Assembly (NCBI RefSeq): GCF_003918875.1 | Contig: NW_025764955.1 | Span: forward strand, 124,001 to 188,000 | Reading direction: 5' to 3' | Length of the DNA stretch: 64,000 nucleotides | Source: Haliotis rubra | Taxonomy: Eukaryota | In this document: one piece after another, positions 8,662 through 64,000 of the stretch | Layout of the letters: every line of letters begins with the position of its first letter | Position numbering within the stretch: position 1 is the stretch's first letter | The notes under the pieces: model-generated | Database searches by the model: none | Seen by the model: the letters and a program-made list of their open reading frames with translations, nothing else | What the model was told of the DNA's origin: nothing | Translations under genes and position numbers: made by a program

Positions 8662-11600
8662 ATGAAGAGCGCTGGCTGGGTAGGAGCCACCCTCCTGCTA
8701 CTGTGCTCATACAGTCAGGGGTATTTCTTCCAAGACGACTACGACCATCAGTATACCTACTCTTCTATGTCGGAACTGTTCGGCCATAAAAATATCACCA
8801 CTGTTCTGAAGGTAAGTTGTAATTATTAACCTGTAATGTGAACATGCATTTTCAAAGTTTCAATATTTATTGGAAACCTTCAGCTCCTGACATGCAAACT
8901 TAGTGGGCGACACGCTTTTCCCACAGCCTTGTACACCACTTAACTATATATAGGACTCAAGCTTGAACAGTTCAGTAATTTCATATATTGTAAAATATAC
9001 CAATTTCATCACAGATATGCCGTTTACTTCTATTGAAATCTGTTTCGGAGATAATCGAAACTTATTCTATGGCGCTGACTTGTAAATTATCCCAAAAAAA
9101 TTGTAAGCCAAACTAGAATACTTTGACGGAATAAATAAACGCATGGGTGTTTTTGAATACCTTCAGTTCAAGATCAGAGCCCTCAATACGACAGGGGATG
9201 GCGGGAGACTGCATTCGTTACGTGTGATCAGTATTGTGCAGTTTGCAGATGGCAGATGTGAGTATTTTTTCACGTTTATTGTTGTCCAACAACATCTTGA
9301 TACATATATACAAAACAAAAAACGAAACTTCACATGTGTCACTTTATGTCCCAAACATACCCTTATAGTTTTAGTTTTAGTGAGGGAGTGAGTTTAGTTT
9401 TACGCCGCACTCAGCAATATTCCGGCTATAAGGCGGAACCCCTATAGTGTGTTGCTAGTGGATAAATCCGGGTTATCGATGATTAGGCATTAAGCTGCGT
9501 CAGGTGCACCCTTTAAAGTCAACGGTAGGATGATAGGTTCACCTTTTTATTTCATCTGTATTGATGTTTGTTCTGTACCGCGTATGCCCCCTCTCGTGTT
9601 CACAACAGCAAGACAACGTTGTCTCATTGAACACCCATGAACACAGCATTAGGCAGCCTGTGCCATTGCTGTACCAACATGGCGCCCAGCACTTCAACAT
9701 TCTGGGGTTGATGTCTCAAGGCACGAAAACTTTTCACAGAGCATCCCATGCTTGTCCGATTGGATTGTGGTCAGTTGGTCTTGATGACCACTCCATGACG
9801 TCAATACCCGCATTTTGCAGGATATGTGTCAAAACAGCTGTGTGTGGTGTGGCATTGTCATGTTGGAATTGAGGTCAGGACCATGACCAGCCGAGAAACA
9901 GGTCCAGGTCAAGGAAATGGTCACGATATCCCGCTGCATTGACGTTCCCACCAATTACGAGAAGACGTGAGGGCACGATCCCGCAGAAAGCTCCCCAAAC
10001 TATTACGCTGTCGCTACGAAATTGACCAGCTTCATGTAGCTGCACTGGAGTTGACGTTCAGCGTTCCGACGCCACGCTCCGTCGGCAAATCGCGGCGTAA
10101 ACCGTATAAACAACCCGATTTCATTCTCCTGGTCCCAGTGCATGTGCAATTGTGCCCAGCGTAGACATTCTTTACGGTTTACCTCGGTCAGAATCGGCCA
10201 AACAGTTTCGAGTCCCCTAAATGGTGCGATACTGGTTCACCTTGCGGTCATCAACTGACGTAGCCGGCATGTGGCGTTACACGCCCCCGTCCTGATCATG
10301 ACCTGGGGCGATCTGTCTTCTGCATCTCAGGGCACGCGTAACAGCCACAGTACTCTAGCCAGTACACTGGCAGTTAGGAGTGAGTGAGTCTAGTTTTACG
10401 CCGCTCTCAGCAATTTTCCAGCTGTATGGCGGCGGTCTGTAAATTATCGAGTCTGGACCAGACAATATAGTGAGCAGTCAGCAGCGTGAGCATTGATCGA
10501 CGCAATTGGGATACGATGACATGTGTCGGCCAAGTCAGCTTGTCTGACCACCCGATCCCGTTAGTCACCTCTTACGACAGGCATGGGTAACTGAAGATCA
10601 ACTCTAACCTGGATCTTCACTGGTTGGTAGCAAGGAACATGAAACTGTGGTCACGTGAACCCGCACACGTGCAGGGTCGCGATTTCACAAAAGAGCGTGC
10701 TGCATGCACCCCGCGTGGTTTACCACAGTTGAAATGGATGGATGCGTCAGGTCAGACCTAGCTTTATGGTATTTGCCCACATTAACTACCTTGTAGACCC
10801 CTGAAGATCCAGGTCAGACCTAGCTTTATGGTATTTGCCCACATTAACTACCATGTAGACCCCTGAAGATCCAGGTCAGACCTAGCTTTGTGGTATTTGC
10901 CCACATTAACTACCATGTAGACCCCTGAAGATCCAGGTCAGACCTAGCTTTATGGTATTTGCCCACATTAACTACCATGTAGACCCCTGAAGATCCAGGT
11001 CAGACCTAGCTTTATGGTGTTTGTCCACATTAGCTACCTTGTAGACCCCTGAAGATCCAGGTCAGACCTAGCTTCATGGTATTTGCCCACATTAACTATC
11101 TTGTAGACCCATAAAGATGCAGGTCAGACCTAGCTTTATGGTATTTGCCCACATTAACTACCATGTAGACCCCTAAAGATCCAGGTCAGACCTAGCTTTG
11201 TGGTATTTGCCAACATTAACTACCTTGTAAACCCCGGAAGATCAAGGTCAGACCTAGCTTTATGGTATTTGCCAACATTAACTACCATGTAGACCCCTGA
11301 AGATCAAGGTCAGACCTAGGTTTGAGGTATTTGCCCACATTAACTACCATGTAGACCCCTGAAGATCCAGGTCAGACCTAGCTTCATGGTATTTGCCCAC
11401 ATTAACTACCTTGTAGACCCCTGAAGATCGAGGTCAGACCTAGCTTTGTTGTATTTGCCCACATTCACTACCTTGTAGACACCTGAAGATCCAGGTCAGA
11501 CCTAGCTTTATGGTATTTGACCACATTAACTACCTTGTAGACACCTGAGGATCCAGGTCAGACCTAGCTTTATGGTATTTGCCCACATTAACTACCTTGT

Positions 11601-17600: not shown

Positions 17601-20600
17601 ACCCCTGAAGATCCAGGTCAGACCTAGCTTTATGGTATTTGCCCACATTAACTATCTTGTAGACCCCTGAAGATCCAGGTCAGACCTTGCTTTGTTGTAT
17701 TTGCCCACATTAACTACCTTGTAGACCCTTGAAGGTCCAGGTCAGACATAGCTTTGTTGTATTTGACTACATTAACTACCTTGTACAACCCCTGAAGATC
17801 CAGGTCAGACTTAGCTTCATGGTATTTGACCACATTAACTACCTTGTAGACCCCTGAAGATCCAGGTCAGACCTTGCTTTGTTGTATTTGCCCACATTAA
17901 CTACCTTGTAGACCCTTGAAGATCCAGGTCAGACATAGCTTTGTTGTATTTGACTACATTAACTACCTTGTAGACCCCTGAAGATCCAGGTCAGACTTAG
18001 CTTCATGGTATTTGACCACATTAACTACCTTGTAGACCCCTGGAGATCCAGGTCAGAAGTGGTCTCCAGCAACTCATGTTTGTCGTAAGAGGCGACTGAC
18101 GGTATCGGATGGACAGGCTTGCTGTCTTGTTTGACACATGTCATCGTATCCAAATTTTGTAAATTGATGCTCATGATGTAAATCACTGGATTGTCTAGTC
18201 CAGACTCCATTACTTACAGACCACCGTGATATAGTCGTGATATTGCTGAGAGCGGCGTTAAACAACAAAACAATAACTACCTTGTACTAACCATTTTCAA
18301 TTTAATTCATTTCTCCAAATGTGAAGTTTCTCTCTTTGTTCAGTATACAATCCTCAGATAAACCCTTTCATAATAAATGTTCAGATAATAATGATCGTAA
18401 AAGCCGAGTGAAATGAGACTCATTTGGTCGCAATGTGTCACCTACCTGATAGTGAATACACATTTTCGAAAACACACTTTCAAAACAAATATGTTTTCCT
18501 ATTTTGCAGACTTCAGTAACCCCAAAGGTTGGAATTTGAAAACAATGTGAGTATCTTTACAACCTGTTACGGACATGTAGTTATGGTTTTGTGTTCCACT
18601 GGCGGTGGTCAACGTAGCAATCACGTGATACCATCACAGAGTTCTTCCTGGTGCTTTTGTCATGAAATGGTTATGTTTACATAAAAAAAACTATAGAAGT
18701 GAATGACCCTAAGCACTGAACTGAGTGAGTTGATGATAAATAGCAGGTAATATAAGCGGGCACTATTTTCATATCACCGAACGGATCGTTTAGATTAACG
18801 TAAATCCTTCTGAATGGCACTAATCGATATACGATCGATATAATGTTTCTTTACATCAGTTTGGAATAGACAAATGTTTGTTTTGACTGAAATGGTGATG
18901 GGGGTGGAGGAGTGTGTGAGGTGGGCATATGTGTCAGTGCGGATGTCCGTTCTCCCAACTCCCAAACCGTTGATTATCTCTAAATGATACACGTCATATA
19001 GGTACGCTTAGTAATAAACAGGCGCCTTTGGATGATTTGAGATTTGTTGAACGTGAACATGCATTTGGCATGCTCCAGGCTGGCCAGTCTACTGTGGCTG
19101 TTGTACGTTCCATGAGATGTAGTAGACGGACAATTCAAAACCTGAGGACACGTGTGCATCGAACGAGTACGACATCTGATCGCCCCAGGTCAGAACGGCC
19201 ACGTGTGACATCACATGCATGTAGATGACAATCAAATTCTGTTTCGTTATTTGCGTGATCGTTTCATGACCGCCAGGAATTGGCTGTTTAGGGGTCGTTT
19301 AACTGCCCAGACCACACGAAACCGCATGCGCGCTGTTTATATACGTGTCCGACGTCCTTATATTTGGCTGATGACATAAGTAACATCTACGCTGGGCACA
19401 ACTGCACCTGCGGTGGCACCAAAGAGAACAGAATAGGGTTGCGTTTAGAGGCGAATCTCGTTTTACACTGCGATTTGCCGACGGAAGTGTGCTAGTGAGG
19501 CGTCGGTGCGGTGAACGTCACGTCACGCCCAGTGCTGCGAACAGGAAGTTGACCGATTACGTGGTGGTATCGTAATGGTATGGAGAGCTTTCTGCGGGAA
19601 CGTGCCCTCACGTCTTCTCGTAATTGGTGGGAACGTCAATGCAGCGGGATATCGTGACCATTTCCTTGACCTGGAGCTGGTTCGTGGCTGCTCATGGTCC
19701 AGACCTCCAATTCCAACATGACAAGGCCACACCACACACAGCTGTTTTGACACATATCCTGCGCGGGTATTGACGTCATGGAATGGCCATCGAGATCACC
19801 TGACCGCAACCCCATCCAACACGTAAGGGGTGTTCTTGAAGGAAACATCTTCATGCCTTGAGACGTCAGCCCAAGAATGCTGTTGAGCATGAGTCTGTTC
19901 ATTTGTTTTATTTTTTTTCTTGTGTTGATGTTTTAGGATCTTGTATGTGTTATGGGTCATCAAACAATTGTATTTCGTCCACTTGTGTATAGCACCTGTC
20001 TCTTTATACACCCGCATCATGGTGATCGTACCATCGTGTTTGATCCTGCTCCTTGTCACTGGGTGACATTTGCTGGAGACTTCTTCTGATTCTTTAGACG
20101 TCTTTACAGGTTTTTATTACTCTCCTTGCAGATTCCTGTTTCGGACTAGTACTAAAGGATCTATTGACCTGGTCCGTGTCCATCCTGAAGACGAGGACGA
20201 GCTGGTGGTCATCAAGAAAGCTGTCACCAGTCTTTTCTCTGTTACTGTCAGGGTATACATTGTGATACTATATGTAAAACTTCAATGTCAGAGAAAAAGC
20301 ATCCACGATTTTCTGCCCAAACTGATGCCATTTGGTGTGAAAGGCCAAATTGACATGAAAATCACATAAATGCTATGAAAACATATATAATATTATAAAC
20401 TCTTGCCTGAGCTTAGCTACAAAATTGTACATTGTACAAAATCAAATTCTTAGATTTAACATGTTGACACACTGGCTACTTTGCTGGGCATACTTTATGC
20501 TCCATGTTTTTTCTCAATAATAAAAGTATGAGTTTGTTCTGATATACGTTTGCGGTGATTAATGTTAACTTAATCCCATCGTGAAGCGGCGTAGTTCTAC

Positions 20601-50600: not shown

Positions 50601-53600
50601 TCAAATTGGCTCACACTTTCCTAATGTGTTTAACTCAAACACCGATCACCTTTGACAAGTGTCCATTTTTATCCCCCAGGCATATAATGCGGGGAACGAT
50701 AGTCAACGCCTCGTTCTTATCTGTCAATATTTCCGTTCAATATTTTCAACGAAATTCGGTAATATGTTTCAAACAGAACCTAAAGTGGTGCTTTTTGGTA
50801 CTCACGGATTTTTTGCAATTTTATTTATTTTGATTTCCATTAAAACAATTTGGACTTGGTTTCCAAAGGAGGGGTGGATTTCCTTCCGGGGCACAACTTG
50901 AAAAGCATGAAAGATTTTTCATCCCAACCTGGTACATGTATTAACCATGGTCGGAAGTAGTGCATTTTGCTATTTCGCTATTTTCCCTGTTTCCATTGAA
51001 ACAAGTTAAATTTTCGGAGCACAACTCGAAAACCGTTCAATATCTTTTATCAAAACTTGCCACATATATCAAACAGATCCTTAGCAGTGCCTTCTGCTAT
51101 TTGCAGAATTTAAACATTTATATTTTTCTTTCTATTCCAGCATGCTACATGCTGTAACCAATGACGCCTTTTCTTATTTAGGAATTTTAAGAAAATATAT
51201 TTGTTTCCTGTTTCCATGGCACCAAATTTACTTTGATTCTGTTCACAGTGATGTGTTTGGCTGAACCATATCTCTAAAACTAATAGGTATTCTTTCATCA
51301 ACCTGTGTGCACACAAAGGTCTGGTTGTGAAATGGTGCCTTTGTGCTACTTTGTTCTTAAGAATTTATGTTGTGTTTGTTTCTATATGTTAGCATGTTTG
51401 ATTTTTGTTTTTGTCAGGACCATATCGCGAAAGAGTATTAAGCATTCTTTCATGACACTACACACACACAAAAGCCAGGATGTCTAATGCTGCCTTTTGG
51501 TATTAGGAATTAATCAAATTTGCATTTTCCCTGTGTACAAAGCTGCAAATCCAAATGAGACAGAAAAATCTCTCATCAAGTAGGACTTTAAGGAACTGTC
51601 AGATGATTTGTACTTTACAATTTGTTTTGATGACTCTTTTAATATGCGGAATTCTAATCCTAATAGAAATTTCGTATTACTTCCAAAGAAAAAAACACAC
51701 TTTTGTCATGTTCATATCGAGATCATTCACACACTAACATATTTGCAGATTTTAAATTCTGGCTGTATACTAGAATACACAGAATACTAGAAACATATTG
51801 TAGCAACACATATGGTTCAATGTTTTCATAGATCATGAGTTGGGTCAAGGTTATTCGACCGAAAGTGCTTTTCAACTGGCAGTTTCTTTCAGACTGTACG
51901 GAAGCGGTGGTATTACACCACCGGAAATGATTATAACATTCTTCTATTATCTGAATTAGTATGCACTTCCTTTAAGTGTCTGACATGATGATATTATGTC
52001 TAAAATGGTCATAACCGTTTTCCTTGCAGCTTTGGATGCTGGAGCAGAACTTGGGCAAGAGATTTCCGTGGATGTACAGACTGTCAAATCAACAATGTCA
52101 GTAAGTGAAATACAAAATCGTATGTAAAGATACTTAAGAGTAATGTAATGAAAAAGAGAAAAGTTCTGATTCTTTAAACTTTCAGTGAATGGGATTTAGA
52201 CAACTGGAAGCAAACTGGGTAGACATACTTCACAGTGAATGGAAATGGATATGAACTCAGGCGGTTGTTCCACTGCCTCACTTGGTTAAGTGTAACTAAA
52301 AAAATAGTTGTTCTCTGACATTATGTTACTACAAACATGGACATGAGTTCCTTGAAATAAGAATTATTTAATGTTTTGTCGTTCTGTTTTGCATTAGACA
52401 AGTATAGGTCCATTTGTTGCCGGAAAAGTCAAAGCATCGTTTGGCATATCGATCATAATTGCATCTGCTGGAATATCTCTCACTGGATGGCTGATGAAAA
52501 CAAGTTTTCCTTTCGTACTGGAGATGAACTACGCAAAAGTACCAACAGTTGCCACGTGAGTACATTTTTTAATCACTGCATTATAGCAAACGCAGATAAG
52601 GTATGGGGCATGTTCTATGCATAGTTTCTGTGGTATCAAATCGTTGACGTTTTGGTGATTATTATATTTTTCAGTGTCGGAACTTTCGAATGATGCAAGA
52701 AATAAATTTGCATTTGTAAACTGTCCAAAAGCACTCAAATACAATTTCCTTTGAAAACATCCGAAATACGGTTTATTCCTGACATACCGTGGAAGTCATT
52801 CCATTCAGCAGCCTTAGCTACCGCCTTTTTGGTCTATCAGGAGACCATATGAGTATATATATGTATGACTGGAACAGCTTAGAAAATTGGGTTACTATGC
52901 AACTAAATTATAAGATAATTCTAAACTTCATCAACGGCAGGCACGTGTCTGAAGGAATGATTTGCTAGCAGTATCACTTCACACTATTTGTTTGTGTGGT
53001 TGTTGTTTACCGTCGCACTCAGCAACAATATTCCACCTATATGGCCGCGATCTATAAATAATCTGTCTGGACCAATCCAGTGATCAGCAGCATGGACATC
53101 GATCTACGAAATTGGGATACGATGAAATGCGTCAAACAAGTCAGTGAGCCTGACCATCCGATCCCCTTGATCGCCTCTTACAACAAGTCGGCTGCTGAAA
53201 ACCACCGGATCTTTACGGGTGCACATCACAGTCTGATTTGTAGGGTAGAATCTCCATATTATTGACAGGATGTTGTGATTGGCTTATGCTTTAGGGATAA
53301 GATATAATCACTCTTGTTATGGTTCCACTTATTGGTCATAATTGTTGTGGATGATAGCATAATGGAAACAAGTCGGACAAATGTTAACAGTCCTACTGAA
53401 CATGGCCAGGACCTCCCATGGGAAGCATTTTAGTTGGAGTTAACATACATGTACTTGTTTAGCAGATCTTGAGGTAAAAAGTGGAACAACGTTCTTCCTC
53501 ACCAATTCTTGTGTGAACCATCGTGTTTTTGCAGGGTGTTGTGAAATTAGCGTCTGCTGTATGATATTTTCAAAGGTACCTGTGTTTGGACAATCCGCAT

Positions 53601-56600
53601 GCGTTTCTTGTACCCCTAATTGTTCTTCCACTATGCTGTATGTCATTGATCAGTAAGTTGCCTTTTGTTTTACTTGCGCCTATATACTATCATATAACCC
53701 ATATCATTGTGAAACGATAATAGATTCAATCTATAATTTCAGAAAAAAACTTAATGTCGAGCTTACACCACTTGAACTACGACTAAGAGCATGGGTAAAA
53801 ATACTTTTCATTATCAACATGCATTTTGACATTTGGCACTGGCGAAGCCCCACATACACTGGCACCATGTGGGAACACCAATATGATATAAACGATAACA
53901 CTCCACCAAGATTCCCCAACTGTGACCACAGGAAGAGGTCATTGTCAGGAAGCTGTTCTGTCCGGCAACTTGATGGAAGGCATCCCAGTGACACAGCATT
54001 CATCCTGGAAGTTGACAGTGGGGATGAAAACAGCCCTCTCACTCTACACTATAGTATTGGTACTTCTCGAGGTGGAAGAGATGTGAAGTCACTGGTGGAG
54101 ATGAGAGGACCCTCCTTAACATTGCCCACAGTTTCACTGCCTCATGGAGTACCTTTGTATTGGACAATAAGGGCTAGGAACACTCAAGGTATTGAGGCAA
54201 CGGCTATGTGCATGCTCCACACCTATGACAATACAGTTCCAGATGGGAGGGTAGATGCTGCCTATCAGTTTACAAGTCATAGAACGGTGATCCAAGCCAA
54301 CGTTGTCGTATTCGAAGATTCTCCACTAACACCTAATCACTCAGTTGCCGTTGGATACAGTCCTGGGGAGTTCGGAAAAGAAATTTTGGATTGGCAAATT
54401 CTGTACCTGGAAAACACAAATGAGAGAAAAGGTGTTATGTCCGAATTGAAAATGTTTGCCCCATCTAAGCCTGGAAAGTTGTCTTCTGCTCCATTTTCTA
54501 CAGCTCATGCAGATAATGATATTGAATGTGCAAGACTGTGTTTGCAGACAGGTTCAAAGTGCATTTCCTTTGACTATGAAATGCATACTCAGTCTTGTGA
54601 TCTCCAGGAAACAGTTGTCGGAGCTAAGGCGAAACTTCGTGCTGCTGCTTCCTATTTTCACTATGAAAGACTTGGAGTTGGTTACAGTGCTTTTCGGGAG
54701 TTCTCTCACTCAAACCTCGAACATGGCGCCCAGTATTTTATAAATGCAAAGATCACCAACACTCTAGGATATGTTGCCTACCTGCCATCAACTGGGACTC
54801 TAGCTGACTTTACTCCACCTGAACCTGGTCCTGTAGGAGAAGCTGCTTCAGATGTGTTGACAGCTGATGGATGTAAGGCAGCTGTGACTCAAAGATGCAT
54901 CGATGTCACCAAGGAGCTCAATCACAGGTAAAACTGCCACCTTTGCCTTCTGCACTATGACAACATAAACATGTTAAAACATCCGAACAGAATATTATTC
55001 TATTGACGTGATGTCTTTTACAGAAAAATCATTGATGGGAGTGCTGGAAGAACGGTTTTTGGAGGCAACAAACCTCTTGACGATACGAAATACACACTCG
55101 CAAACAACTATATCTCAGGTAATCTACTTAAACACACATGCCAAGTGTCGCTATGAAAATCTGACATACAATGCCTGCGGAAGACCCATTGGGTAATGAT
55201 TACATTTCCTTATGTAACTGTGGATAATTTGTTCTGTGTGGTTTGTTGTTATTTGTATTACTGTGTTTACTTTTTACAGGAAACTGCGATGGCTTCCACG
55301 ACGACGAAAGTGGTATTTGGGGCTACACGTGGGCAGCTGGGACGTCTGTGTGTGGGTCTGATGTTGTGAAGTTCACTGATCCTCACGCTCAACTACAAAC
55401 CAGGCAAGACTGGACCTACACCGGACTGGGCAAGAATCTCCATCTGGCTGATGGTCAGTACTATATCACCTTCCAAGCTATCAACAATGTTGTACACGGA
55501 GGAGCTTTGGTTACAACAGTGTGTCACTCTACACCTGTGACAGTTGACACGACACAGCCCGTAGTACATGAGGTAGGGGATTTGCTGTTTGATGAGGATT
55601 TTGATATCTTGGGCGTCTACTTCAATGTATCGGACTCTGGATCGGGTATTGCCAGGGTGGACTTTGGTCTGGGCAAAACAAAGTATGATGTATTTGTTAG
55701 ATCTTACAGCCGTCATCCCTTCCTGAACCGAGCTGACCCATACCTTGTGATAGAAGATCTTGGCTTGACACCTGGTGTCCAGGCTTGGGTGCGAATCAGA
55801 GCCGTTAATTCAGGTAAGGAGAAACTATTGACATAATAGACAGACACATTTAAAATTATTAAAATTAAACTGTAACTGTCCGTGAGACAAATATTTATAA
55901 CATGTTATTGTTTGTTATTAATAGTGGATCTCTCCACTGCAAGCCATGGTGATGTCCCGATACTCATTGACTTTACACCGCCAGTCGTTGGTAAAGTACT
56001 TGATGGGGACAAACTGCTCGAAGATGTTGAATACCAGCATAACACACAGATGATCTGTGCACAGTGGGTCGACTTCTATGATCCAGAATCTGGTATTGAC
56101 AGGTATGTGAAGTCAATTCTCAAATTCTACTTTGTCTGTGATGACACAATGTACCTGTATGCATCTCGCACCAATGTGTGAATGAAACACTTTAAACATA
56201 TGCGCATGTTTATACCATTCGCATTGACGATCTACACGAGCCCCAACACTAGCATGGTATTTCATCTGTCATAGTGATTGTTTAGGTGCTTAAGAACAAT
56301 GTAGCAATATACCTGTACTTTCAGTTATCTCTGGGGTGTTGGAACGACTGCTGGAGCTGATGACATTCTTCCATTTACAAATTTTACGCATCAAGTTAAA
56401 TCTTGGTGCAACGTCACAACTCTGCACCACAATACAACATACTATTCAACAGTTGTCGCTTTCAATGGGGCAATCAATCAGAAGGAAATTCAGGCAACAT
56501 CTAATGGAGGTATGTTTGCTAATCGTACATATTGTTTTATGATGTCATAAGCCATATTTAAGGGTCCGTAAGAGGGTCTGAAAGTGCAGAAAGCTAATCA

Positions 56601-59600
56601 GGAAATAAACCCATCTGCAGAACAATTTAGGACCGGATAAAAAGTTAGAATACACAAACGTACTGAGAGTTAGTTCCCCTATATGTGATATATAAACATC
56701 TTGACAATGACGTGTGACATTTATTCTAGAAAAGGAAAATATGGCTGGTATTTTGAAAATGTTCTAACAAAATTGTGACAATTCTTAAAGACAGACAGAC
56801 AAAAGTCATGGCATACTGTTGTATAGTAGATAGTGTACATATGGATGTCGTATTGTGATTTCATTCTGAAAGAATGGCGGGTATACCTATTGTCTTCTAT
56901 TTCAGTGCTGGTAGACATAACACCTCCACTGCTGGGGTTTGTCCAGGATGGTCCTGATATTGTGAATGATGTGGAGTTCAGCTCTCAGACAGCTACTATT
57001 GAAAGTGCCTGGGCCAACTTCACTGACCCAGAAAGCCATGTACAAGAGTACACAATGATGGTATATGTAAACGATGAACTGAAAAAGAAGTTCCATATTG
57101 GATCCATGACCAGTTACACTGACCATACAATTGACACTAAACACAAGGACCATGTCCGAGTTCAAGTCACAGCAACAAATGGAGCAGGACTTGAAACACA
57201 AGCAGACAGTAATGGGTATATGGTTGACGAAACACCGCCAAACATGATGTATATACAAGATTCTCAGACAGGGAAATACCAAAGTGATTCCTCACACCTT
57301 GGCGTTAAGTGGTATTTTACAGATGAAGAGTCAGGCATCTTGGAATACAGATACACTATATTTGAGAAGATTGGTGGTCAGAAGAAAAAGTTTTGGCCAA
57401 AGGATGAGACATTTGCTGTCATTGAAGTTGAAAAAGCAGACATACAGTTGGATTCCCTTCCTCTTACAAATGGGGCCCAATATACAACATCAGTCACTGC
57501 ACTCAACAACGCCCTTCTTGCAACGTCAGTAGAATCAAGTGGAGTTGTTATTGACACAACACCGCCCACAGTAAAGAAAGTGAGTATCCATCATCGTATA
57601 AACTTTATTTTGCAAGGAAGTTTGAATCACCAATGATTAATTTTATTCTGTTTTCAAGACAGCAATCAGGAACAATCATGCATATCCAGTGTATGGAAGG
57701 GTTTTCAAAACCTTTTGCAAGTTTATAAGCACACAAACTGTTCCTGTTGAGAATTTTCTGCAATATAAAACGTATTCATTTGTGCAATATAATAACGCAT
57801 GCCTGAAGCCAATACACCTGTAATTAGGTATTTGAACAGTTGCTTCACGTGTTGTAGGTACTAATCGGTCTCCCTGGGCAAGAGGAGGAGCTTGATGACT
57901 TCGGAAATGTAATCCATATGGAGGATCAACCGATGCATGTGTCTTGGACAGCTCGTGATCCTGAGAGTGGTATCTCTCAAAATCTGCTTTGTGTGAAGAA
58001 CAATGTCATACAGTGCACTCGAAGTGAGCAGTTTACCAACTATGGAAGCACATCATCTGTAACATTAGAAGCTCTCAATCTTATATCAGATGACAAGACT
58101 CAGTACGTTGTCGTTATCAGAGTAACAAATGGAGCAGGCTTGACAGCAGAAGCTTCATCAAAGCCAATACATGTAGAGAAGGGAAACTCCCCTGGAACAG
58201 TCTATGATGGTCGAAGTATCAGTGAAGATACAGATTTCCAGCAAGATCTTTCAAGTCTATCCATGTCGTTCGATGGCTTTGGTAGTGATGCGTGTGGAAT
58301 AACCGGCTATGACTGGGCGATTGGAACACAGCCATACCTGAGTGACATAATGCATTACACAAACTATGGACTTACGATGGTCAGCGACAGTTCAGGATAT
58401 GCGGAAATAACAAATACAAACTTCAACAATGTGAAGTACTATGTTACAGTCCGGGCTATAACTGGTGTGGAATGTCCAGACTCGTACATCGTATCATCAT
58501 CAAATGGTGTAACGGTTGACCATGAAGTTCCTGTTATAAATCAACAGTACAGAGGTCAAATGATGTCTTCCTCACTTTTGTTTTTAAACCAAACAACAAC
58601 TCTACCAATATCATGGTCTGTTGAGGATGCAAATATCATGCCTGTGATTTCCTGGTCAATAGGGAGCCTCCCAGTCTCTGGTGAAAAACACACTGTTAAT
58701 ATTTCAAAGTCGGGTCTTGATCCATGGGACATAAGTCTTTCAGCAAACAACACATATTTCGTGACAACATATGGCTCTGATATGGCAGGCAACAAGGCTT
58801 TAATGAGTTCACCGCCAATCACAGTTGATGAAACCCCCGTCTCTATTATTGACTATGAGTGTACACCTTTTGTATCAATGATGTCAACAATTGTCACTTG
58901 TTCTTGGAGGTTTTTCGAAGAAGCAGAAAGTACCATCACTAACGTAACAATCACAGCACGTACAGGACAAGGCAGCTCGCATATATTAGTGGTTAGCAGG
59001 CTGTCGGCAATTGAGAGACGCTGGAGCTTTGACACAGAGGGAGTTTTGCAAGATGGAGTTTCATTCCTGTATATAACTCTGGAAATTGAAAATGGTGCAC
59101 ATCTACGCAGCAAATTCTTTAAAGAAATTGTCTTTGATCAGACACCGCCAGCCGACGGGGAACTCTCAGTAGTTACATCATCTAATCCATCATCCAAAGA
59201 GGAAGTAGTCTGCCAGCAACAAACAACGTACATGTCTGTCTTTGTGAATAGATTCAACGATCCCGAATCACAGATAGACAGGTGAATTACAACTTTGCTA
59301 CATGAATAAAAACTCACAGTTAAGATTTATGCAGAAACATCCCTTACAGCCACGACATTTCCTCATATGTTATCGATTATATAATCATAATGCTAAAACT
59401 GTAATATGTTTCAGGTATGAAGCAGGACTGGGAAGTGAGCGAGGACTGACAGATGTTCTTCCTTTCACAAAAGTCACTTTGTCCAATGGACTGTTTGTAG
59501 TTCCAAACCTACACTTGGAATCTGGAGCCCTCATCTTTGTCACTGTCCGCATTTTCAACAAAGCCGGTCTGTTCGCAGTGAAAGAAAGTAACCCGTTGGC

Positions 59601-62600
59601 TATCAGCCCAAAACCCTACCTACTTGTTTGGGATGGACCAGGATCTGATGATGTTGATAGTCAACATGATCTGACGACCATTCAGGGAAGGTGGGGTTAC
59701 TCTGATCCCTGTCCAGTGATATCAGCAGAGTGGGCAGTAGAAGACATCACAGGGGAGATTATCAAAGGCTTTGAACAAACCCCTGGGAATGGTCATAACT
59801 TCTACAATGATGAATTGACATTGGAGAATATGAAGACATATAGAGTCATTGTGAGAACCACTGATGCCCTCAACCGCACCATGATTGGGCGATCTGATGG
59901 GGTAATGGTCAAGATTCAGCCTCCAGTTCCTGGGAATGTTCGAGATGGCATTGCTTCTGACATCAACTACCAGCTACCTACAAATTACCTTGCAGCAAAC
60001 TGGGATCCGTTTGGAGAAATGAATGATTTGGACCCATCACAGAAAATTGAATACTATGAAGTGGCTGTAGGGAATGACAGAAGATATAAAGACAGGAGAT
60101 CCAATGTTCATTTCTTTGAGAACGTTGGTCTCAACAGAAGTTATGTCTTTAAGCATTTAAATCTAACCGCAAAAACAGTTACATATTACATCACAGTGAG
60201 GGCATACAGTTCTGCTGGAAGTTATGAAGAATCTTTTTCAAATGGAATCCGAGCTGGATTTGGAACAGACATCGTGTTGGGAGATATCGAAGTTGCTGAG
60301 TACCAATCCAGCTCCAGTGAAATACAAGTATCATGGTCTGACTTTATATCTGACTTTAACATTCGGAAATATGAGGTTGCTGTTGACACTGAAGAATATA
60401 CAGAGTCAAATACAAGCTTGGAATGTCACGCTATTGTCTTTCAGCCACTTGTGGCATTTGAGTCTGTCAACAAAGACACAATCAAAACCATAAAAGGTCT
60501 TCAATTAAATCATTCTGAGGTTTACTTTGTCCTTGTCAAAGCTGAAGATGAGGCAGGGATGTGTCTGATTGCATCCAGTAAAGCAATTACAATTGATACA
60601 ACACCACCGCAACCAGGACAAGTGATCATTGATGGTGGACGGTCATCTGGTATTCTATATGCCACTCAACTGCACTCTGTACATATAAACATGACAGGAT
60701 TTACAGATGAAGAAAGTTCCATAGATTACTACACGGTGGCATTATTAGGGGGACTTTTCTGCACTGATTCAATGTCATTATCCCCCAAAGACAAAGACGT
60801 TTTACGTTCTGTTACTGTTTCAACTTCCGATGCCCACTTCAACGATCTCATGTTAGACACAACCAGGCCATACTATATACAGGTTACAGCAGCTAATAAG
60901 GCAGGTTTGAAGACGACTGTGACAAGTGAACCTATTTTAGCAGATTACAACCCTCCAGTTGCTGGAAACATAAAAATTGGGTCAGATTGGAGGTACAGTT
61001 CAAGGTCTTGGGGCGATACGAACCTGTTACAAGGCACAATTCTCATCAATACCAACATACACGATTCAACATGTAAAACTGAAAGAGAACTACTGAATAA
61101 TAACTATAAAAAGGAAATAGTGATTTTGGATGATGTCTTCCAATCGCACGCTGTTGATATTGTAGATAATAACCGTGTCAAGATATATGCACGACTTGAC
61201 CCGTCGCTGCAACTGTTTGAAAAAGGAGGAGTCAAAACAAACCCAACGCTACTGACAGAAGGCAACTATTCATTTTCTCTTCAGGCTACAGCACGACACA
61301 ACGTTTCATCTATGATAGGTCTGATTCAAGAAAGTCTTCCAAATCCTGATGATATCTTAAAGGCTTATGCAAAGATATTTATAGATAATTGCAATGGCAG
61401 TGCATGTTCTAACGGCGACAGGACTGTAGTAACTGATGACGAGAGTTGGAACCTTGGCGTTCTCTTGACTATGAATAACATCTCAGAACCCCTAATTCTG
61501 TTCTGGGCCAAGGATAAATCCAGAATCAAAGTTCATAATGTCCATGTAGACTTTGATCCAAGTTTCTCACTGAACGACTTTTCTCTTCAAGCAATAAATG
61601 ATTCAACACCATCAACAGCTTCGTGGGATATAAATCTATTCATCAACGGTCAGTTGAAAGGTCAACATGCTGGACTGAACATTCAAGGATACGTTGTCGC
61701 CTCTGTGTTCTCCTGGAACAATGATGGATATATTCCACAAGTGGATGATCCGTTTGACCCATTCACAACTAACCTACTCCTGTCATCACTGAGACTACCG
61801 CTCCCGCAAATACACCCATGTAGGTACGGACGGGCATTTTATGATTCACAGAGCGGGATCAAAGATATTTCCATTGGTCTGTCAGATTCTCAGAACACAA
61901 CTGCAAACGTAGTACCTTATACGAAACAAATGTCATTTTGTGTTCCTTGCAAAGATCTTTGCAAAGAAAGTTGTGGCTTTGAAGGTTCCTGTTCCAAGAG
62001 TACAGACCAACAGGGATTATCAGTAAGGCATTTCCAACTCAGCAACTTGACACTGATTCCCTCTCGGATGACTGATCGAATTAACTACACTGATTCCCAA
62101 GCCAGTGCCTACTATTTTGATGTGAAAGTAACTGATCATGCTGGTTATGAAAAACAAATCAAGTCTAACGCAATCATCATTGACACAACACCCCCAGTGG
62201 TGACTGATGTCACTTGCTTTGATCCGGAGTACTCGCTGTATGAACCTGCACTCTACATTGGAAATGATCATGCTGTCAGTGCTAAGTGGGAGATATCAGA
62301 GGATTTCAGTGACATCAACGCTGTCTTTGTTGGAATTGGAACAAAATGTGGACTAGATGATATTGTTCAAATACCCCTTCAAAACAGACTGAAGAATGTA
62401 ACACTGAATTCAACAAAAGAAAGTCTTCAACAGGATCAAAAGTATTTTGTCGGTGTTACCGTAATAAATTCTGCTGGTCTCAACCACACTGCGTGCTGTC
62501 CATTTGTCATTGATATTAAATCTCCCACAGTTTCCTCTACTGAACCAGTGCCACTGTTTGTCTCAGCAGAAGATGTAGCCGGACTTAACGTTTCACTTAC

Positions 62601-64000
62601 CGAGTACAATGATCGAGTTGGAATCCAGTGGGATGATCCTCATAGTGATGTGGACTATTTTGGTGAGACAAACCCTGACTTATTGTTTCTTCTTTGTACC
62701 TAAATGCATATGTTATATTAGATGATACAGTGTCAAAGTTGGAACAGCTGAAATGCTCGATCACTTTGGTGTTTTTCCCTTTGAACATTTTGTTATTGGG
62801 TCGACTGGACAGGTGTTCTGAAATGCCGTACTTCTATCTATTTCGTACCTACGCTGGGATCCACCAGTCCCCAGTTTGAACCCAATACGTCTCCTGATTA
62901 TGATCCTTGATTTGTCAACCTCAAACATTGTGCATGGTTCAAGGTTACCATCTGTTTCTAATTTTAAAAACGTTTCATTTTCCCACAGCTATGCTTATGT
63001 CATTTAAATGATGTTTAAGACTGGCAGCTGGCGAGTGAGGATTCAGCAGACGAAATATATCCAACAATGCGAGTCGGTTCCAACACAACTCGACGTGTCG
63101 AGGTCCTGAAGGGAGATATAAGTCTTTCGCATGGCGCTGTCAACGCTTCAGTGTCTGAATTCCTTAACAGAAACTTCTCTGATGGTCTTAAGAGTGCCGA
63201 CTTCAAGAATAGTCCACTCATGCTGGAACCAGGCAAATGTGTCATCCAAACCGTGACTTCTGTCAGTAGAGCTCACAAGAGAAAGGATTTGACGTCACAG
63301 AAGACCTGCATTAAACGTAATGTCTTTCTTTAGGTATATGTTGATATTTGTAACATATTTCAACACATTATTCAGCCTCTGCTGATTCCGGGTAATCAAC
63401 ACGGATGGCTTATGGATTTATATCCTTCACTGGTTTGCCTAGTCCAGATTCAGTTATAAACAGCTTTTGCGAAAATATTCCCGAGAGGCATTACAAACAA
63501 CATTTTATCGTTCATATTAAATGTGCAATCAGTTACTTATTTACTTATTATGATGTGGCTTTTGTATTGTCCAGGCAAGAAAGACATGATTGTGAAACAG
63601 GGTACCAACAAAACACTTGTGATTGACGGCGTTGTCATCTCCGAGTCATTGGCAAAGAACAATCACTCTGTTTGCACAATATCAGTGGAAGGTAAGGTGA
63701 TCAGATGATTAGATAGTAGCGTCAGTTCCGTCAAGCACAAACTCTGCAGTTAATACTAATGTATTTACATGGTTTGATCCGACCTAAATTTCGAGACAAT
63801 TACGGTATTTGTTTTTCTGTATGTTCTGCAATATGTGCAATGTACCCATACTGTTGTGTAGTTTCCAGTGGCGCCCTAGCGGTCGGTGTACTGAGCAAGA
63901 CAGATCAACACATGGCCTACGGTGCTCCAGCCGCCGTGGATTATTCCCCTTACATCGTCAGCCCCGACATCACCTCGACACAGCTGTCCCGGTTTCTCAC
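8662..64000 (+). CDS. Giant secreted multidomain protein (LLTP/vitellogenin-N-like + LECT2/M23-like + PAN + FN3-like repeats), over 4,300 aa, incomplete at 3' end
   Basis: 43 hand-chained GT-AG exons with consistent phases and no stops: 8662-8811, 9167-9257, 18510-18546, 20132-20252, 20636-20687, 21201-21301, 30318-30412, 30676-30722, 32188-32242, 32414-32483, 32762-32843, 33080-33366, 33571-33625, 33775-33918, 34319-34524, 34993-35123, 35357-35529, 35888-36033, 36131-36463, 36786-36928, 37173-37243, 39775-39926, 40298-40467, 40982-41156, 41767-42317, 42479-42762, 44148-44348, 44834-45025, 45987-46123, 46580-46751, 52030-52100, 52398-52555, 53743-54927, 55024-55118, 55280-55813, 55925-56102, 56325-56509, 56906-57579, 57858-59281, 59415-62662, 63020-63316, 63575-63691, 63862->64000. 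N-terminus MKSAGWVGATLLLLCSYSQG is signal-peptide-like. Confidence 0.85.
9550..10330 (-). mobile_element. Degenerate Tc1/mariner transposase remnant
   Basis: Reverse-complement homolog of 19020-19880 (shares cgtgccctcacgtcttctcgtaattggtgggaacgtcaatgcagcgggatatcgtgaccatttcc). Confidence 0.7.
10378..10624 (-). mobile_element. SINE-like family A copy
   Basis: Homology to 5053-5323. Confidence 0.8.
10748..18057. repeat. 62-bp tandem satellite array, about 118 copies, intronic
   Basis: Consensus caggtcagacctagctttatggtatttgcccacattaactaccttgtagacccctgaagatc repeated head-to-tail over 7.3 kb with no spacers. Confidence 0.97.
18035..18273 (+). mobile_element. SINE-like family A copy whose 5' end is part of the satellite monomer
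   Basis: 13-bp TSD taactaccttgta (18022-18034 / 18274-18286); (CAA)n-like tail. Confidence 0.85.
19020..19880 (+). mobile_element. Degenerate Tc1/mariner transposase remnant
   Basis: HTH-like start (AFGMLQAGQS...DRPRSERPRVTS) and remnants of the WPSRSPDxNPI motif; many stops and frameshifts. Confidence 0.75.
20132..35123 (+). CDS. Exons encoding a vitellogenin-N/MTP-like (large lipid transfer protein) beta-sheet and alpha-helical module of the giant gene
   Basis: Motifs GSIDLVRVHPEDEDELVVIKKAVTSLF, ACLAVGSLARNL, ILLHSLGNAGHP and WRRAAVEALRHY resemble LLTP N-terminal and HEAT-like helical-domain motifs (LxxLGNxG; RxAAxxALR). Confidence 0.65.
20704..20860 (-). mobile_element. tRNA-related SINE family C
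   Basis: Homology to 6619-6757; on - it begins cggtggggtagcctagtggttaaagcgttcgct (A-box-like). Confidence 0.7.
23718..28140 (-). mobile_element. L1/Tx1-clade LINE, 5'-truncated, near-complete ORF2
   Basis: ORFs 27660-25297 (APE endonuclease NCRGL, GDWN, RLDFF, SDH; RT RQGDP, YADD) and 25312-23882 (CxxC-H-C zinc knuckle) joined by one frameshift; A-rich 3' end; 12-bp TSD accaatcagttg (23706-23717 / 28141-28152). Confidence 0.92.
27866..28020 (-). mobile_element. SINE family C copy inside the LINE 5' region
   Basis: Homology to the copies at 6619 and 20704 (ggggagacaccagaaat...gtaccca). Confidence 0.6.
28453..28807 (+). mobile_element. tRNA-derived SINE
   Basis: A box tggtgtagtgg and B box ggttcgatccc; (CCA)n tail; 12-bp TSD caagatcttact (28441-28452 / 28808-28819). 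Confidence 0.88.
30809..32105 (+). mobile_element. Full-length Tc1-type DNA transposon with inactivated transposase
   Basis: TIRs of about 28 bp ((c/t)agta..accagaaattattgagaattt) flanked by TA; transposase remnants GAGRPRK, FSDES, VWGGI, FQQDNDPKH, SPDLN/IENVW with stops and frameshifts (31002-31981). Confidence 0.92.
37675..39463 (-). mobile_element. 5'-truncated LINE (RTE/RTE-X-like RT) with (TC)n tail
   Basis: ORFs 39438-38524 (KAFD, GVGQG, LLADD) and 38687-37818 (CALC...H...C); aataaa followed by (tc)n on -; 65-bp direct repeat flanks. Confidence 0.88.
40982..42060 (+). CDS. LECT2-like / peptidase M23-fold domain (two exons) of the giant gene
   Basis: RRPSDSSCGKGTYPSDTRSKYGTAGIDLVLNKGWK|VINPVAGIV...QAQVIGTSGGNNGCDWPHIHLAV...YMDPSPF matches the LECT2/M23 pattern RxxDxxGxGxY...HxGxD...VxAPxxG...GQxIG...HxH...DP. 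Confidence 0.65.
45131..45386 (+). mobile_element. 5'-truncated SINE-like family B copy
   Basis: TSD tcaaatgacc (45121-45130 / 45387-45396); homology to 4420-4663. Confidence 0.75.
47440..50527 (+). mobile_element. Degenerate Rex1/Babar-like (CR1/L2 group) LINE
   Basis: Endonuclease (LSNIRSLENK, GFTETWL, VYIPP) and RT (YRPVALTSIAMKSLER, GAPQG, KFADD) fragments with stops; (ATTCT)n tail at 50490-50527. 5' boundary approximate. Confidence 0.85.
50666..51950 (+). mobile_element. Probable non-autonomous Helentron/HINE-like element
   Basis: Starts tttttatccccc...gggg (short hairpin); degenerate internal repeats; 3' subterminal hairpin cggtggt-attac-accaccg (51905-51923); no ORF. Confidence 0.5.
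52990..53220 (-). mobile_element. SINE-like family A copy, diverged
   Basis: Homology to 5053-5323. Confidence 0.75.
53743..54927 (+). CDS. Exon with FN3-like repeats and a PAN/apple domain
   Basis: ORF 53819-54931; ECARLCLQTGSKCISFDYEMHTQSCDL has the PAN cysteine spacing (CxxxC-C-SF-Y-C). Confidence 0.75.
55280..62662 (+). CDS. Exons encoding a tandem FN3/Ig-like repeat array, including a 3,248-nt exon (59415-62662)
   Basis: Recurrent F-x-D-x-ESGI-xx-Y-x-W/V-xx-G and Y-x-x-x-V-x-A-x-NxAGL...S-x-G-x-x-x-D-x-T-P-P motifs across ORFs 55243, 55882, 56833, 57918 and 59302. Confidence 0.85.

What the first reader, a model, noticed from the sequence alone, without database searches (positions are those of the whole stretch)
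8662..64000. Giant secreted polyprotein-like gene with an unusual domain string: LLTP-like, LECT2/M23-like, PAN and FN3 array
Seen: 43 exons chain in frame from a signal peptide to over 4,300 aa. Established: LLTP N-termini (vitellogenin, MTP, apoB) bind lipid; M23 folds (LytM, LECT2) engage peptidoglycan or act as cytokines; PAN and FN3 domains mediate binding. Inference: no vWD domain is visible within the window, so this is not a canonical vitellogenin. It may be an uncharacterised haemolymph or mucus scaffold coupling lipid binding to microbe recognition.
Basis: partly seen in the sequence, partly recalled or inferred. Interest (0 to 1): 0.85.

Follow-up and report, generated by a model that had tools for sequence, protein, structure and literature searches.

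The report
Giant LLTP–M23–PAN–FN3-like surface protein gene
This is one real 43-exon gene for a roughly 5,000-residue invertebrate protein that joins a vitellogenin/apoB-type head, an inactive bacterial-wall-hydrolase-like domain, a PAN domain and about 18 FN3-like modules; it belongs to a conserved family that nobody has studied, and its relatives are mostly anchored in the membrane.

Summary
A spliced profile alignment rebuilds 43 GT–AG exons (8662–64000, + strand) encoding 4,292 stop-free residues. These align in one BLASTP match (aa 11–4292 to 10–4323, 33%) with 5,123–5,135-aa "uncharacterized" Haliotis proteins.

Both results that would have refuted the finding came out in its favour.
- **M23 domain:** its model hits only M23/LytM chains, LECT2 included. 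The site is degenerate: TAGID replaces HxxxD, and the LytM His260 equivalent is Ile.
- **Other domains:** PAN passes Pfam's threshold on the window's own exon. No vWD, DUF1943 or DUF1081 is found.

The interpretation needs three corrections.
- Only the β-barrel plus helical half of the LLT module is recovered, so lipid binding is not shown.
- Eleven of 16 full-length relatives, including all five bivalve ones closest to this gene, end in a transmembrane helix and tail. A membrane-anchored surface protein is therefore more likely than a soluble scaffold.
- Two convertase sites are conserved across the family; two others occur only in this window.

No RNA evidence was obtained, because the runs found were DNA. 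I found no paper on the family. I read it as a new architectural variant of the LLTP superfamily with unknown function. The scan had already noted the M23 domain and the furin sites on this same stretch.

The parts
8662..8811 (+). Exon 1: start codon, signal peptide (8662-8721), first beta-barrel strands
   Evidence: ORF-level family HMM hit E 8e-8; tblastn to P0005 aa 10-49
9167..9257 (+). Exon 2 (provisional)
   Evidence: Collinear weak HMM hit E 3.4; chosen by the aligner
18510..18546 (+). Exon 3 (provisional)
   Evidence: Aligner only
20132..20252 (+). Exon 4, beta-barrel
   Evidence: HMM E 2.6e-6
20636..20687 (+). Exon 5 (provisional)
   Evidence: Aligner only
21201..21301 (+). Exon 6, beta-barrel
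   Evidence: HMM E 3.3e-5
30318..30412 (+). Exon 7, beta-barrel
   Evidence: HMM E 1.6e-3
30676..30722 (+). Exon 8 (provisional)
   Evidence: Aligner only
32188..32242 (+). Exon 9 (provisional)
   Evidence: Collinear weak HMM hit E 13; aligner
32426..32483 (+). Exon 10 (provisional)
   Evidence: Aligner only
32762..32843 (+). Exon 11 (provisional)
   Evidence: Collinear weak HMM hit E 1.3
33080..33366 (+). Exon 12, start of LLTP alpha-helical domain
   Evidence: HMM E 1.3e-24; tblastn 37% to P0005 299-391
33571..33625 (+). Exon 13 (provisional)
   Evidence: Collinear weak HMM hit E 5.4
33775..33918 (+). Exon 14, helical domain
   Evidence: HMM E 5.7e-8
34319..34524 (+). Exon 15, helical domain; convertase site A, RHKR|S, at 34330-34344
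   Evidence: HMM E 5.5e-22; site is R-x-K/R-R in most homologues
34993..35123 (+). Exon 16, helical domain
   Evidence: HMM E 5.4e-9
35357..35529 (+). Exon 17; convertase site B, RMRR|S, at 35385-35399, at the end of the LLTP-alignable region
   Evidence: HMM E 2.5e-14; R-x-K/R-R in 11 of 12 homologues; VIA alignments end at P0005 residue 589
35888..36033 (+). Exon 18, four-strand sheet after site B
   Evidence: HMM E 2.5e-12; strands 600-680 in the model of P0005
36131..36463 (+). Exon 19, long-helix region
   Evidence: HMM E 2.3e-12
36786..36928 (+). Exon 20, long-helix region
   Evidence: HMM E 5e-4
37173..37243 (+). Exon 21 (provisional)
   Evidence: Aligner only
39775..39926 (+). Exon 22; window-specific RHRRRKR at 39861-39881
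   Evidence: HMM E 0.23, collinear; the site is absent from homologues
40298..40467 (+). Exon 23
   Evidence: Aligner; raised depth of organism-B DNA at >=90% likeness
40982..41156 (+). Exon 24, first part of the M23-like domain; TAGID in place of HxxxD at 41118-41132
   Evidence: HMM E 8.5e-19; organism-B contig 40998-41160; motif alignment
41767..42317 (+). Exon 25, M23-like core (to about 42096); HIH motif at 41962-41970
   Evidence: HMM E 2e-34; LytM/lysostaphin are the best PDB sequence hits, E 0.04; Pfam Peptidase_M23 is the only hit, E 0.088
42479..42762 (+). Exon 26, no known domain
   Evidence: Aligner; organism-B conservation
44148..44348 (+). Exon 27, Cys-rich segment
   Evidence: HMM E 3.9e-8
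44873..45025 (+). Exon 28; window-specific RHKR|D at 45004-45018
   Evidence: HMM E 0.016; organism-B contig 44856-44995; the site is not conserved
45987..46123 (+). Exon 29
   Evidence: Weak HMM hit E 1.8; organism-B contig 45951-46110
46580..46751 (+). Exon 30
   Evidence: Aligner, score 25.8
52030..52100 (+). Exon 31 (provisional)
   Evidence: Aligner only
52398..52555 (+). Exon 32
   Evidence: HMM E 3.5e-9
53743..54927 (+). Exon 33; PAN/Apple domain at 54476-54664
   Evidence: tblastn 42% identity, E 3e-105; Pfam PAN_1 25.4 bits, above the cut-off of 21.4
55024..55118 (+). Exon 34, start of the beta-sandwich module array
   Evidence: Aligner score 77.8
55280..55813 (+). Exon 35, modules
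   Evidence: tblastn 47-52% identity, E 1e-72 to 1e-79
55925..56102 (+). Exon 36, module
   Evidence: Aligner score 159
56325..56509 (+). Exon 37, module
   Evidence: tblastn 52-56% identity
56906..57579 (+). Exon 38, two modules
   Evidence: tblastn E 1.5e-38 (P0005) and 2.5e-57 (P0010)
57858..59281 (+). Exon 39, four or five modules
   Evidence: tblastn E 1e-59 to 1e-67
59415..62662 (+). Exon 40, 1,083 codons: modules plus a roughly 360-aa insert (60925-62007)
   Evidence: phmmer finds 1,074 relatives, best E 7e-226; Pfam fn3 33.8 bits; weak GH16/ConA-like leads for the insert
63020..63316 (+). Exon 41, last module in the window
   Evidence: tblastn E 5e-8 to 5e-9
63575..63691 (+). Exon 42 (provisional)
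   Evidence: Aligner only, score 6
63862..64000 (+). Exon 43, runs off the window; about 800 residues of the protein, including any TM helix, lie beyond
   Evidence: tblastn to P0005 4280-4323; homologues are 4,640-5,363 aa

Best explanation
The stretch 8662-64000 (+) carries the first 43 exons (4,292 aa) of one intact gene. The gene is an orthologue of a roughly 5,000-aa protein family found in molluscs, brachiopods, hemichordates and amphioxus, annotated only as 'uncharacterized'.

Shown here, in order along the protein:
- a signal peptide;
- the beta-barrel plus alpha-helical half of an LLTP (vitellogenin/apoB/MTP) module;
- two family-conserved R-x-K/R-R convertase sites, one in a loop of the helical domain and one exactly where the LLTP-like fold ends;
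- a long-helix region;
- an M23/LytM-fold domain lacking the first zinc-binding His and the His260-type catalytic His;
- about 450 residues with no known domain;
- a PAN domain;
- about 18 tandem ~110-aa FN3/Ig-like modules, interrupted by a ~360-aa insert.

Inferred: like its bivalve orthologues, the protein probably continues into one transmembrane helix and a short, unconserved tail. On this reading it is a type I cell-surface protein. The module array would form a long stalk holding a composite binding head (LLTP half-module, pseudo-M23, PAN) far from the membrane. Furin-type cleavage during secretion would separate or loosen that head. The M23-like domain would act as a non-catalytic binding module, as in LECT2, EnvC and NlpD. 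The most likely role is surface adhesion or recognition of extracellular ligands, rather than bulk lipid transport. I give about 0.9 to the gene and its architecture, about 0.75 to membrane anchoring, and about 0.3 to the adhesion/recognition role.
For: Gene model: 43 GT-AG exons and no stops. One end-to-end HSP to Haliotis, Saccostrea and other proteins. Controls for the weak N-terminal exons score 20-25 against 132.9 for the real strand. DNA of a related species stays >=90% alike mainly on the predicted exons.

M23 domain: the Foldseek top 50 are all M23/LytM, with LytM TMt 0.67 and LECT2 included. The family profile hits PDB Peptidase M23 at E 6.5e-5 and LECT2 at 0.013. Pfam Peptidase_M23 appears in 10 of 14 members and as a precomputed hit together with PF01347 in Saccoglossus P0172.

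Other features: PAN; modules; convertase sites; TM helices; placement among bivalve orthologues. Degenerate M23 folds are described as interaction modules in PMC9662197.
Against: No transcript evidence exists for this species, because the runs found were genomic DNA. The LLTP and M23 folds were modelled on the Haliotis orthologue, not on the window's own spliced protein, which could not be handed to the tools. Nine small exons are provisional. The C-terminus lies outside the window, and the four Haliotis models and some amphioxus models lack a TM helix. The model is of low confidence after residue 590 (pLDDT 45-70), so a missing lipid cavity is not proven. There is no expression, localisation or binding data for any family member, so the proposed function is inference only.
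Confidence: 0.6

Rival explanations
1. One reading: a soluble, secreted haemolymph or mucus scaffold (polyprotein) that couples LLTP-type lipid binding to M23/PAN-based microbe recognition.
For: The signal peptide and convertase sites are present. Haliotis and some amphioxus family members have no TM helix. A membrane-anchored form could also be shed. A precedent exists in decapods: the 4,831-aa dLp/HDL-BGBP precursor is a furin-cut LLTP that yields a beta-glucan-binding lipoprotein (PMC8416765).
Against: All five full-length bivalve orthologues, which are the window protein's closest relatives, carry a TM helix and a tail. Only the barrel and helical half of the LLT module is recovered, and no DUF1943 or DUF1081 is found. 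The M23 site is degenerate. No binding data exist.
Confidence: 0.2
2. A conventional lipid-carrying LLTP (an apolipophorin/apoB-like or yolk-type precursor) that happens to have a long C-terminal extension.
For: The LPD_N fold is present. A conserved dibasic site sits after the helical domain. This resembles the furin site of apoLp-II/I and apolipocrustacein, which lies between motifs N19 and N20 (PMC1783640).
Against: The markers of the APO and VTG classes (DUF1081, DUF1943, vWD) are absent from the window and from full-length homologues. After residue 590 the model shows four strands and then long helices, not C/A sheets. Most members have a TM anchor.
Confidence: 0.07
3. A chaining artefact: two or more neighbouring genes (an LLTP/M23 gene and a PAN/FN3-like gene) joined by the reader and by my aligner.
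For: There is no RNA evidence here. The 5.3-kb intron 46752-52029 holds a LINE, and the exons on either side of it are weakly conserved. The homologues are themselves computed gene models.
Against: The same collinear architecture appears in more than 15 models from four phyla, with single end-to-end HSPs. No stop, start or second signal peptide is needed anywhere. Phases are consistent across all 42 introns.
Confidence: 0.04

Closest known systems
Large lipid transfer protein superfamily (vitellogenin/lipovitellin, apoB-100, apolipophorin II/I, MTP)
   Same: It has an N-terminal beta-barrel plus a two-layer alpha-helical domain (LPD_N / Vitellogenin_N), a signal peptide, and a dibasic convertase site just after the helical domain, as in apoLp-II/I and apolipocrustacein.
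   Different: No C/A lipid-cavity sheets are detectable, and DUF1943, DUF1081 and vWD are absent. The LLTP part is less than 15% of the protein. It is followed by M23-like, PAN and FN3-like modules and, in most members, by a TM anchor. It fits none of the three recognised classes (APO, VTG, MTP).
LECT2 and degenerate LytM domains (EnvC, NlpD, Csd2)
   Same: It has the M23 beta-sheet fold with incomplete catalytic motifs. The N-terminal part of the domain resembles LECT2 in sequence: amphioxus members even keep HQGVD.
   Different: It is embedded in a giant multidomain protein rather than being a 16-kDa cytokine or a bacterial divisome factor. The window copy has Thr in place of the first zinc-binding His but keeps HxH, whereas most relatives keep only the second His.
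Decapod dLp/HDL-BGBP precursor (4,831 aa)
   Same: It is a giant LLTP-headed precursor with a signal peptide, cut at furin sites, and one product is linked to microbial-pattern (beta-glucan) binding.
   Different: That protein has LPD_N plus DUF1943, is a soluble haemolymph lipoprotein, and has no M23, PAN or FN3-like modules and no TM helix. Homology beyond LPD_N was not tested here.
Bacterial giant Ig-like repeat adhesins (for example MAG proteins P0013 and P0016)
   Same: They share the ~110-aa beta-sandwich module with a D-x-T-P-P linker, about 35% identity over many repeats, E 1e-163 to 1e-169.
   Different: The bacterial proteins lack the LLTP, M23-like and PAN head. The relationship (common module or transfer) is unresolved.

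Membership tests
LLTP superfamily | LPD_N / Vitellogenin_N sequence signature | tested here: met
   Pfam PF01347 matches 13 of 15 family N-termini, best E 8e-16. P0005 scores 31.8-34.2 bits against a cut-off of 24. The window's own exons match the family HMM over the same region (E 1e-24, 6e-22, 3e-14 and others). The spliced window protein itself could not be scanned.
LLTP superfamily | N-sheet beta-barrel followed by an alpha-helical horseshoe (fold) | tested here: met
LLTP superfamily | C and A beta-sheets forming the lipid cavity (full LLT module; DUF1943) | tested here: inconclusive
   No PF09172 hit in 15 members. The model shows only four strands (600-680) and then long helices, with pLDDT 45-70. 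No structural alignment extends past residue 594.
Vitellogenin / APO classes | vWD domain (VTG) or DUF1081 (APO) | tested here: not met
   Neither was found in the window's large exons or in the full-length homologues P0005 and P0010. Class definitions are from PMC10799875.
Peptidase M23 / LytM / LECT2 | M23 fold | tested here: met
   For the model of P0005:940-1150 (core pLDDT 81-93), the Foldseek top 50 are all M23/LytM, with LytM TMt 0.67 and LECT2 at rank 26. The family profile hits 5kqb at E 6.5e-5.
Peptidase M23 / LytM / LECT2 | Catalytic motifs H(x)nD and HxH plus the His260-type histidine (PMC9662197) | tested here: not met
   The window has T-A-G-I-D (His replaced by Thr), keeps H-I-H, and has Ile at the LytM His260 position. 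It is therefore a degenerate M23 and is predicted to be inactive.
PAN/Apple | Pfam PAN_1 above the gathering score, with the four-Cys core | tested here: met
   Window exon 33 scores 25.4 bits against a cut-off of 21.4, E 1.2e-5. The core reads CARLC...C...C, at 54527-54604.
Fibronectin type III | Pfam fn3 match for each module | tested here: inconclusive
   The whole-exon sum is 33.8 bits (cut-off 25), but no single stretch passes, and a sub-piece scores 24.6 bits. Most of the ~18 modules are seen only by a self-built HMM. Bacterial relatives are called Ig_J_second, Ig_Rha78A_N or Big_13. The modules are FN3/Ig-like beta-sandwiches, not canonical fn3.
Type I membrane protein | Single C-terminal TM helix with a basic cytoplasmic flank | not testable with these tools
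   The window ends about 800 aa before the C-terminus. The feature is present in 11 of 16 full-length homologues, including all 5 full-length bivalve ones.

The most novel reading that the evidence does not exclude
This family would be a fourth branch of the LLTP superfamily, and a membrane-tethered one. A furin-processed vitellogenin/apoB-type half-module, fused to a pseudo-peptidoglycan-hydrolase and a PAN domain, would sit on a roughly 18-module stalk and act as a cell-surface sensor or capture device for lipidic or bacterial-wall ligands in marine invertebrates. The family would have been lost in vertebrates and ecdysozoans.
Probability: 0.2. Interest if true: 0.8.

Novelty: new variant of a known kind. 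Interest (0 to 1): 0.6.

Why it matters
LLTPs are thought of as soluble lipid carriers of three classes: apoB-like, vitellogenin-like and MTP. A conserved, probably membrane-anchored giant that keeps only the barrel-and-helix half of the module, and fuses it to a degenerate M23 domain, would widen that picture. LECT2 is so far described as the sole mammalian M23 member. The family also gives a second animal context for the LECT2-type fold, and it offers a testable candidate for surface recognition in molluscs, hemichordates and amphioxus. Practically, it gives a curated gene model and domain map for a family that every database lists as 'uncharacterized'.

Tried and rejected
- **RNA support:** the only runs holding the locus (X1-X3) are genomic DNA, since their contigs cover introns and show no splice joints. 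X4 is DNA of a related species. No junction was confirmed by transcripts.
- **Pfam on single window exons:** this finds nothing for the LLTP part, and Peptidase_M23 only at E 0.088. The spliced protein has no reference and was not typed in.
- **PDB sequence-profile search with the N-terminal alignment:** this gave only designed HEAT/alphaRep proteins, not LLTPs. The fold search was needed.
- **First aligner run:** it produced 47 exons, including 3-, 12- and 22-nt micro-exons, one of them inside the satellite. A deeper profile removed them.
- **Window-specific dibasic sites:** RHRRRKR at aa 889 and RHKR at aa 1415 are not conserved, so they are not counted as family processing sites.
- **The 360-aa insert:** there is no Pfam hit, and the only PDB hits are two GH16 glucanases at non-significant E-values. 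I kept this as a lead only.
- **Cytoplasmic tails of homologues:** no conserved sorting or signalling motif was found.
- **Literature:** eight searches, including twelve locus names, found no paper on the family.
- **Pseudogene reading:** rejected, because there are no stops in 12.9 kb of coding sequence.
Full report
**What is in the window**

The window is animal DNA with transposon-filled introns. These hold:
- a 62-bp satellite of about 118 copies at 10748-18057;
- LINE elements on the minus strand at 23882-27660 and 37818-39438, and on the plus strand at about 47.4-50.0 kb;
- Tc1-like remnants at 31026-31978.

On the plus strand there are very long open frames near the 3' end: 424, 475 and 1,141 codons. 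The ATG at 8662 opens a typical signal peptide.

**Finding relatives**

I ran an exhaustive phmmer search with the 1,141-codon frame. It found 1,074 relatives, with a best E-value of 7e-226, and many of them are 4,600-6,000 aa long. Translated BLAST of four long relatives against the window gave collinear matches along the whole stretch. For Haliotis P0005 (5,123 aa), residues 10-49 match at 8692-8811 and residues 4280-4323 match at 63867-63998.

All named relatives are annotated "uncharacterized protein". They come from Haliotis, Saccostrea, Mytilus, Ylistrum, Argopecten, Argonauta, Lingula, Saccoglossus, Ptychodera, Glandiceps and Branchiostoma.

**Gene model**

I wrote a spliced profile-to-genome aligner. 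It uses GT-AG introns only, scores split codons, and allows no stops or frameshifts.
- With a six-sequence profile it gave 47 exons and 4,308 aa, including some micro-exons that looked spurious.
- With a 13-sequence profile of the N-terminal 1,700 columns it gave 33 exons up to 54927, and the micro-exons disappeared.
- Adding the ten downstream exons gives 43 exons, 12,876 coding nt and 4,292 aa with no stop.

The model aligns to P0005 in one HSP, aa 11-4292 to 10-4323, at 33% identity. It aligns in the same way to Saccostrea, Mytilus, Argopecten, amphioxus and Ptychodera proteins.

ORF-level searches with the family HMM do not depend on my aligner. They support most exons, for example 33082-33369 at E 1e-24 and 41761-42144 at E 2e-34.

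The weakest part is the set of beta-barrel exons scattered over 8.8-33 kb. There the real strand scores 132.9, against 20.3-25.3 for six controls.

Transcript evidence failed. The runs that hold the locus are genomic DNA. However, DNA of a related species stays at least 90% alike mainly on the predicted exons between 40.2 and 46.2 kb. Nine small exons remain provisional.

**LLTP head**
- Pfam Vitellogenin_N matches 13 of 15 family N-termini, with a best E-value of 8e-16. P0005 passes the gathering score.
- An AlphaFold model of P0005:1-960, built with 15 sequences, shows a beta-barrel with an internal helix (residues 26-262) and 17 helices (276-590) at pLDDT 75-93.
- The eleven best Foldseek hits in the PDB are all LLTPs: MTP at E 4e-16, then honeybee vitellogenin, lipovitellin and apoB-100.

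Nothing aligns beyond that point. The model then shows four strands followed by long helices, at low confidence. DUF1943, DUF1081 and vWD are absent.

So the fold claim holds, but only for the barrel-plus-helix half. The sheets that line the lipid cavity in lipovitellin are not shown to exist here. By the class definitions quoted in PMC10799875, this protein is neither VTG nor APO, and it is much more than MTP.

**Convertase sites**

The model has four R-x-K/R-R sites.
- RHKR|S (aa 463-466, at 34330) is R-x-K/R-R in most of the 12 homologues aligned.
- RMRR|S (aa 581-584, at 35385) is R-x-K/R-R in 11 of 12 homologues, from molluscs to amphioxus and hemichordates.
- The other two sites are found only in this window.

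The second conserved site falls in a disordered loop exactly where the LLTP-like fold ends. This recalls the furin site of apolipophorin II/I and apolipocrustacein, which lies between motifs N19 and N20 (PMC1783640). That the positions are equivalent is my inference.

**M23-like domain (exons 24-25)**
- The window exon alone gives LytM, a "Peptidase M23" entry and lysostaphin as its best PDB sequence hits, at E 0.04-0.9.
- The family profile gives Peptidase M23 at E 6.5e-5 and LECT2 at 0.013.
- Pfam Peptidase_M23 appears in 10 of 14 members. It is also precomputed, together with Vitellogenin_N and fn3, in a Saccoglossus member.
- The model's core (pLDDT 81-93) matches only M23/LytM chains in the top 50, with LytM at TMt 0.67 and LECT2 at rank 26.

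The review PMC9662197 defines the family by the motifs H(x)nD and HxH plus a His about 30 residues upstream of HxH. The window has TAGID, with His replaced by Thr, as in other molluscs; amphioxus keeps HQGVD. The window keeps HIH, and it has Ile at the LytM His260 position. The domain is therefore a degenerate M23. Degenerate M23 folds elsewhere act as binding modules, as in EnvC, NlpD and LECT2.

**The rest of the protein**
- PAN passes Pfam's threshold on the window's own exon.
- An HMM seeded from three modules finds 12 copies, and 18-19 after iteration, of a ~110-aa module between aa 1839 and 4156. Copies are often linked by D-x-T-P-P.
- Pfam sees fn3 only weakly.
- The strongest non-animal relatives are bacterial giant Ig-like repeat proteins, at E about 1e-169.
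- A roughly 360-aa insert at 60925-62007 has no Pfam hit. It has only weak GH16/ConA-like leads.
- Residues of about 1150-1840 have no recognisable domain.

**Secreted or anchored?**

The window stops about 800 residues short of the C-terminus. Eleven of the 16 full-length homologues have a single strong hydrophobic helix followed by a basic cluster and a poorly conserved tail of 93-195 aa. The four Haliotis models and two amphioxus models have none.

A maximum-likelihood tree of aa 1601-2560 places the window protein inside the mollusc clade (support 100/100). Within it, the protein groups with the bivalve orthologues (90/92) and is sister to Mytilus (86/84). All five full-length bivalve orthologues carry the helix. 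A type I surface protein is therefore the more likely form, at about 0.75.

**How it probably works (inference)**

The module array would make a long stalk. It would carry, far from the membrane, a head made of the LLTP half-module, the pseudo-M23 domain and the PAN domain. Furin-type cleavage at the conserved sites would separate or loosen that head. In known LLTPs the barrel and helical domains are mainly protein-contact surfaces; for example, the apoB barrel binds the LDL receptor in 9bd8. I therefore favour adhesion or ligand recognition over bulk lipid carriage. No experiment on any family member was found.

**Novelty**

The family is in sequence databases, but I found it in no paper (eight searches). 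It fits none of the three recognised LLTP classes. I rate it a new architectural variant of a known superfamily. Its functional reading is only partly supported.

Noticed in passing
window 55024-63316 (module array); proteins P0013, P0016: The ~110-aa beta-sandwich module has very close bacterial relatives. An Acidimicrobiia MAG protein on a 2.6-Mb contig matches at E 2e-169, 35% identity, over 17 stretches. A Schekmanbacteria protein matches at E 2e-163. Pfam calls those repeats Ig_J_second, Ig_Rha78A_N or Big_13. Whether this reflects a shared ancient module or a transfer is open.
   Followed up: partly
window 60925-62007: A roughly 360-aa insert inside the module array has conserved Cys at its end and no Pfam hit. 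The only PDB profile hits are two GH16 beta-glucanases (E 0.17 and 0.63), and the Atlas leads are ConA-like families. Other notes of this scan describe GH16-like or lectin-like inserts in FN3-like giants elsewhere in this genome.
   Followed up: partly
window 10748-18057: A 62-bp satellite of about 118 copies (84-89% matches) fills most of the 9.3-kb intron 2.
   Followed up: no
window 23882-27660 (- strand): A LINE in intron 6 has two long intact frames: 787 aa with endonuclease and reverse transcriptase domains, and 476 aa with zf-RVT. It may be a young copy.
   Followed up: no
window 45225-45423 and 42837-43035: These are short repeats with extreme copy number in DNA contigs of both species, with summed word depth up to about 2.2 million. 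Many contigs break at 45322 and 45389.
   Followed up: no
window 47400-50020 (+ strand) and 31026-31978: A degraded LINE (RVT_1 fragment) lies in the 5.3-kb intron 30, and a Tc1-like transposase remnant with stops lies in intron 8.
   Followed up: no
whole gene; tree of aa 1601-2560: The window protein groups with bivalve orthologues (sister to Mytilus, 48-50% identity in this region), so the genome is probably that of a bivalve with no protein set in the searched collections.
   Followed up: partly
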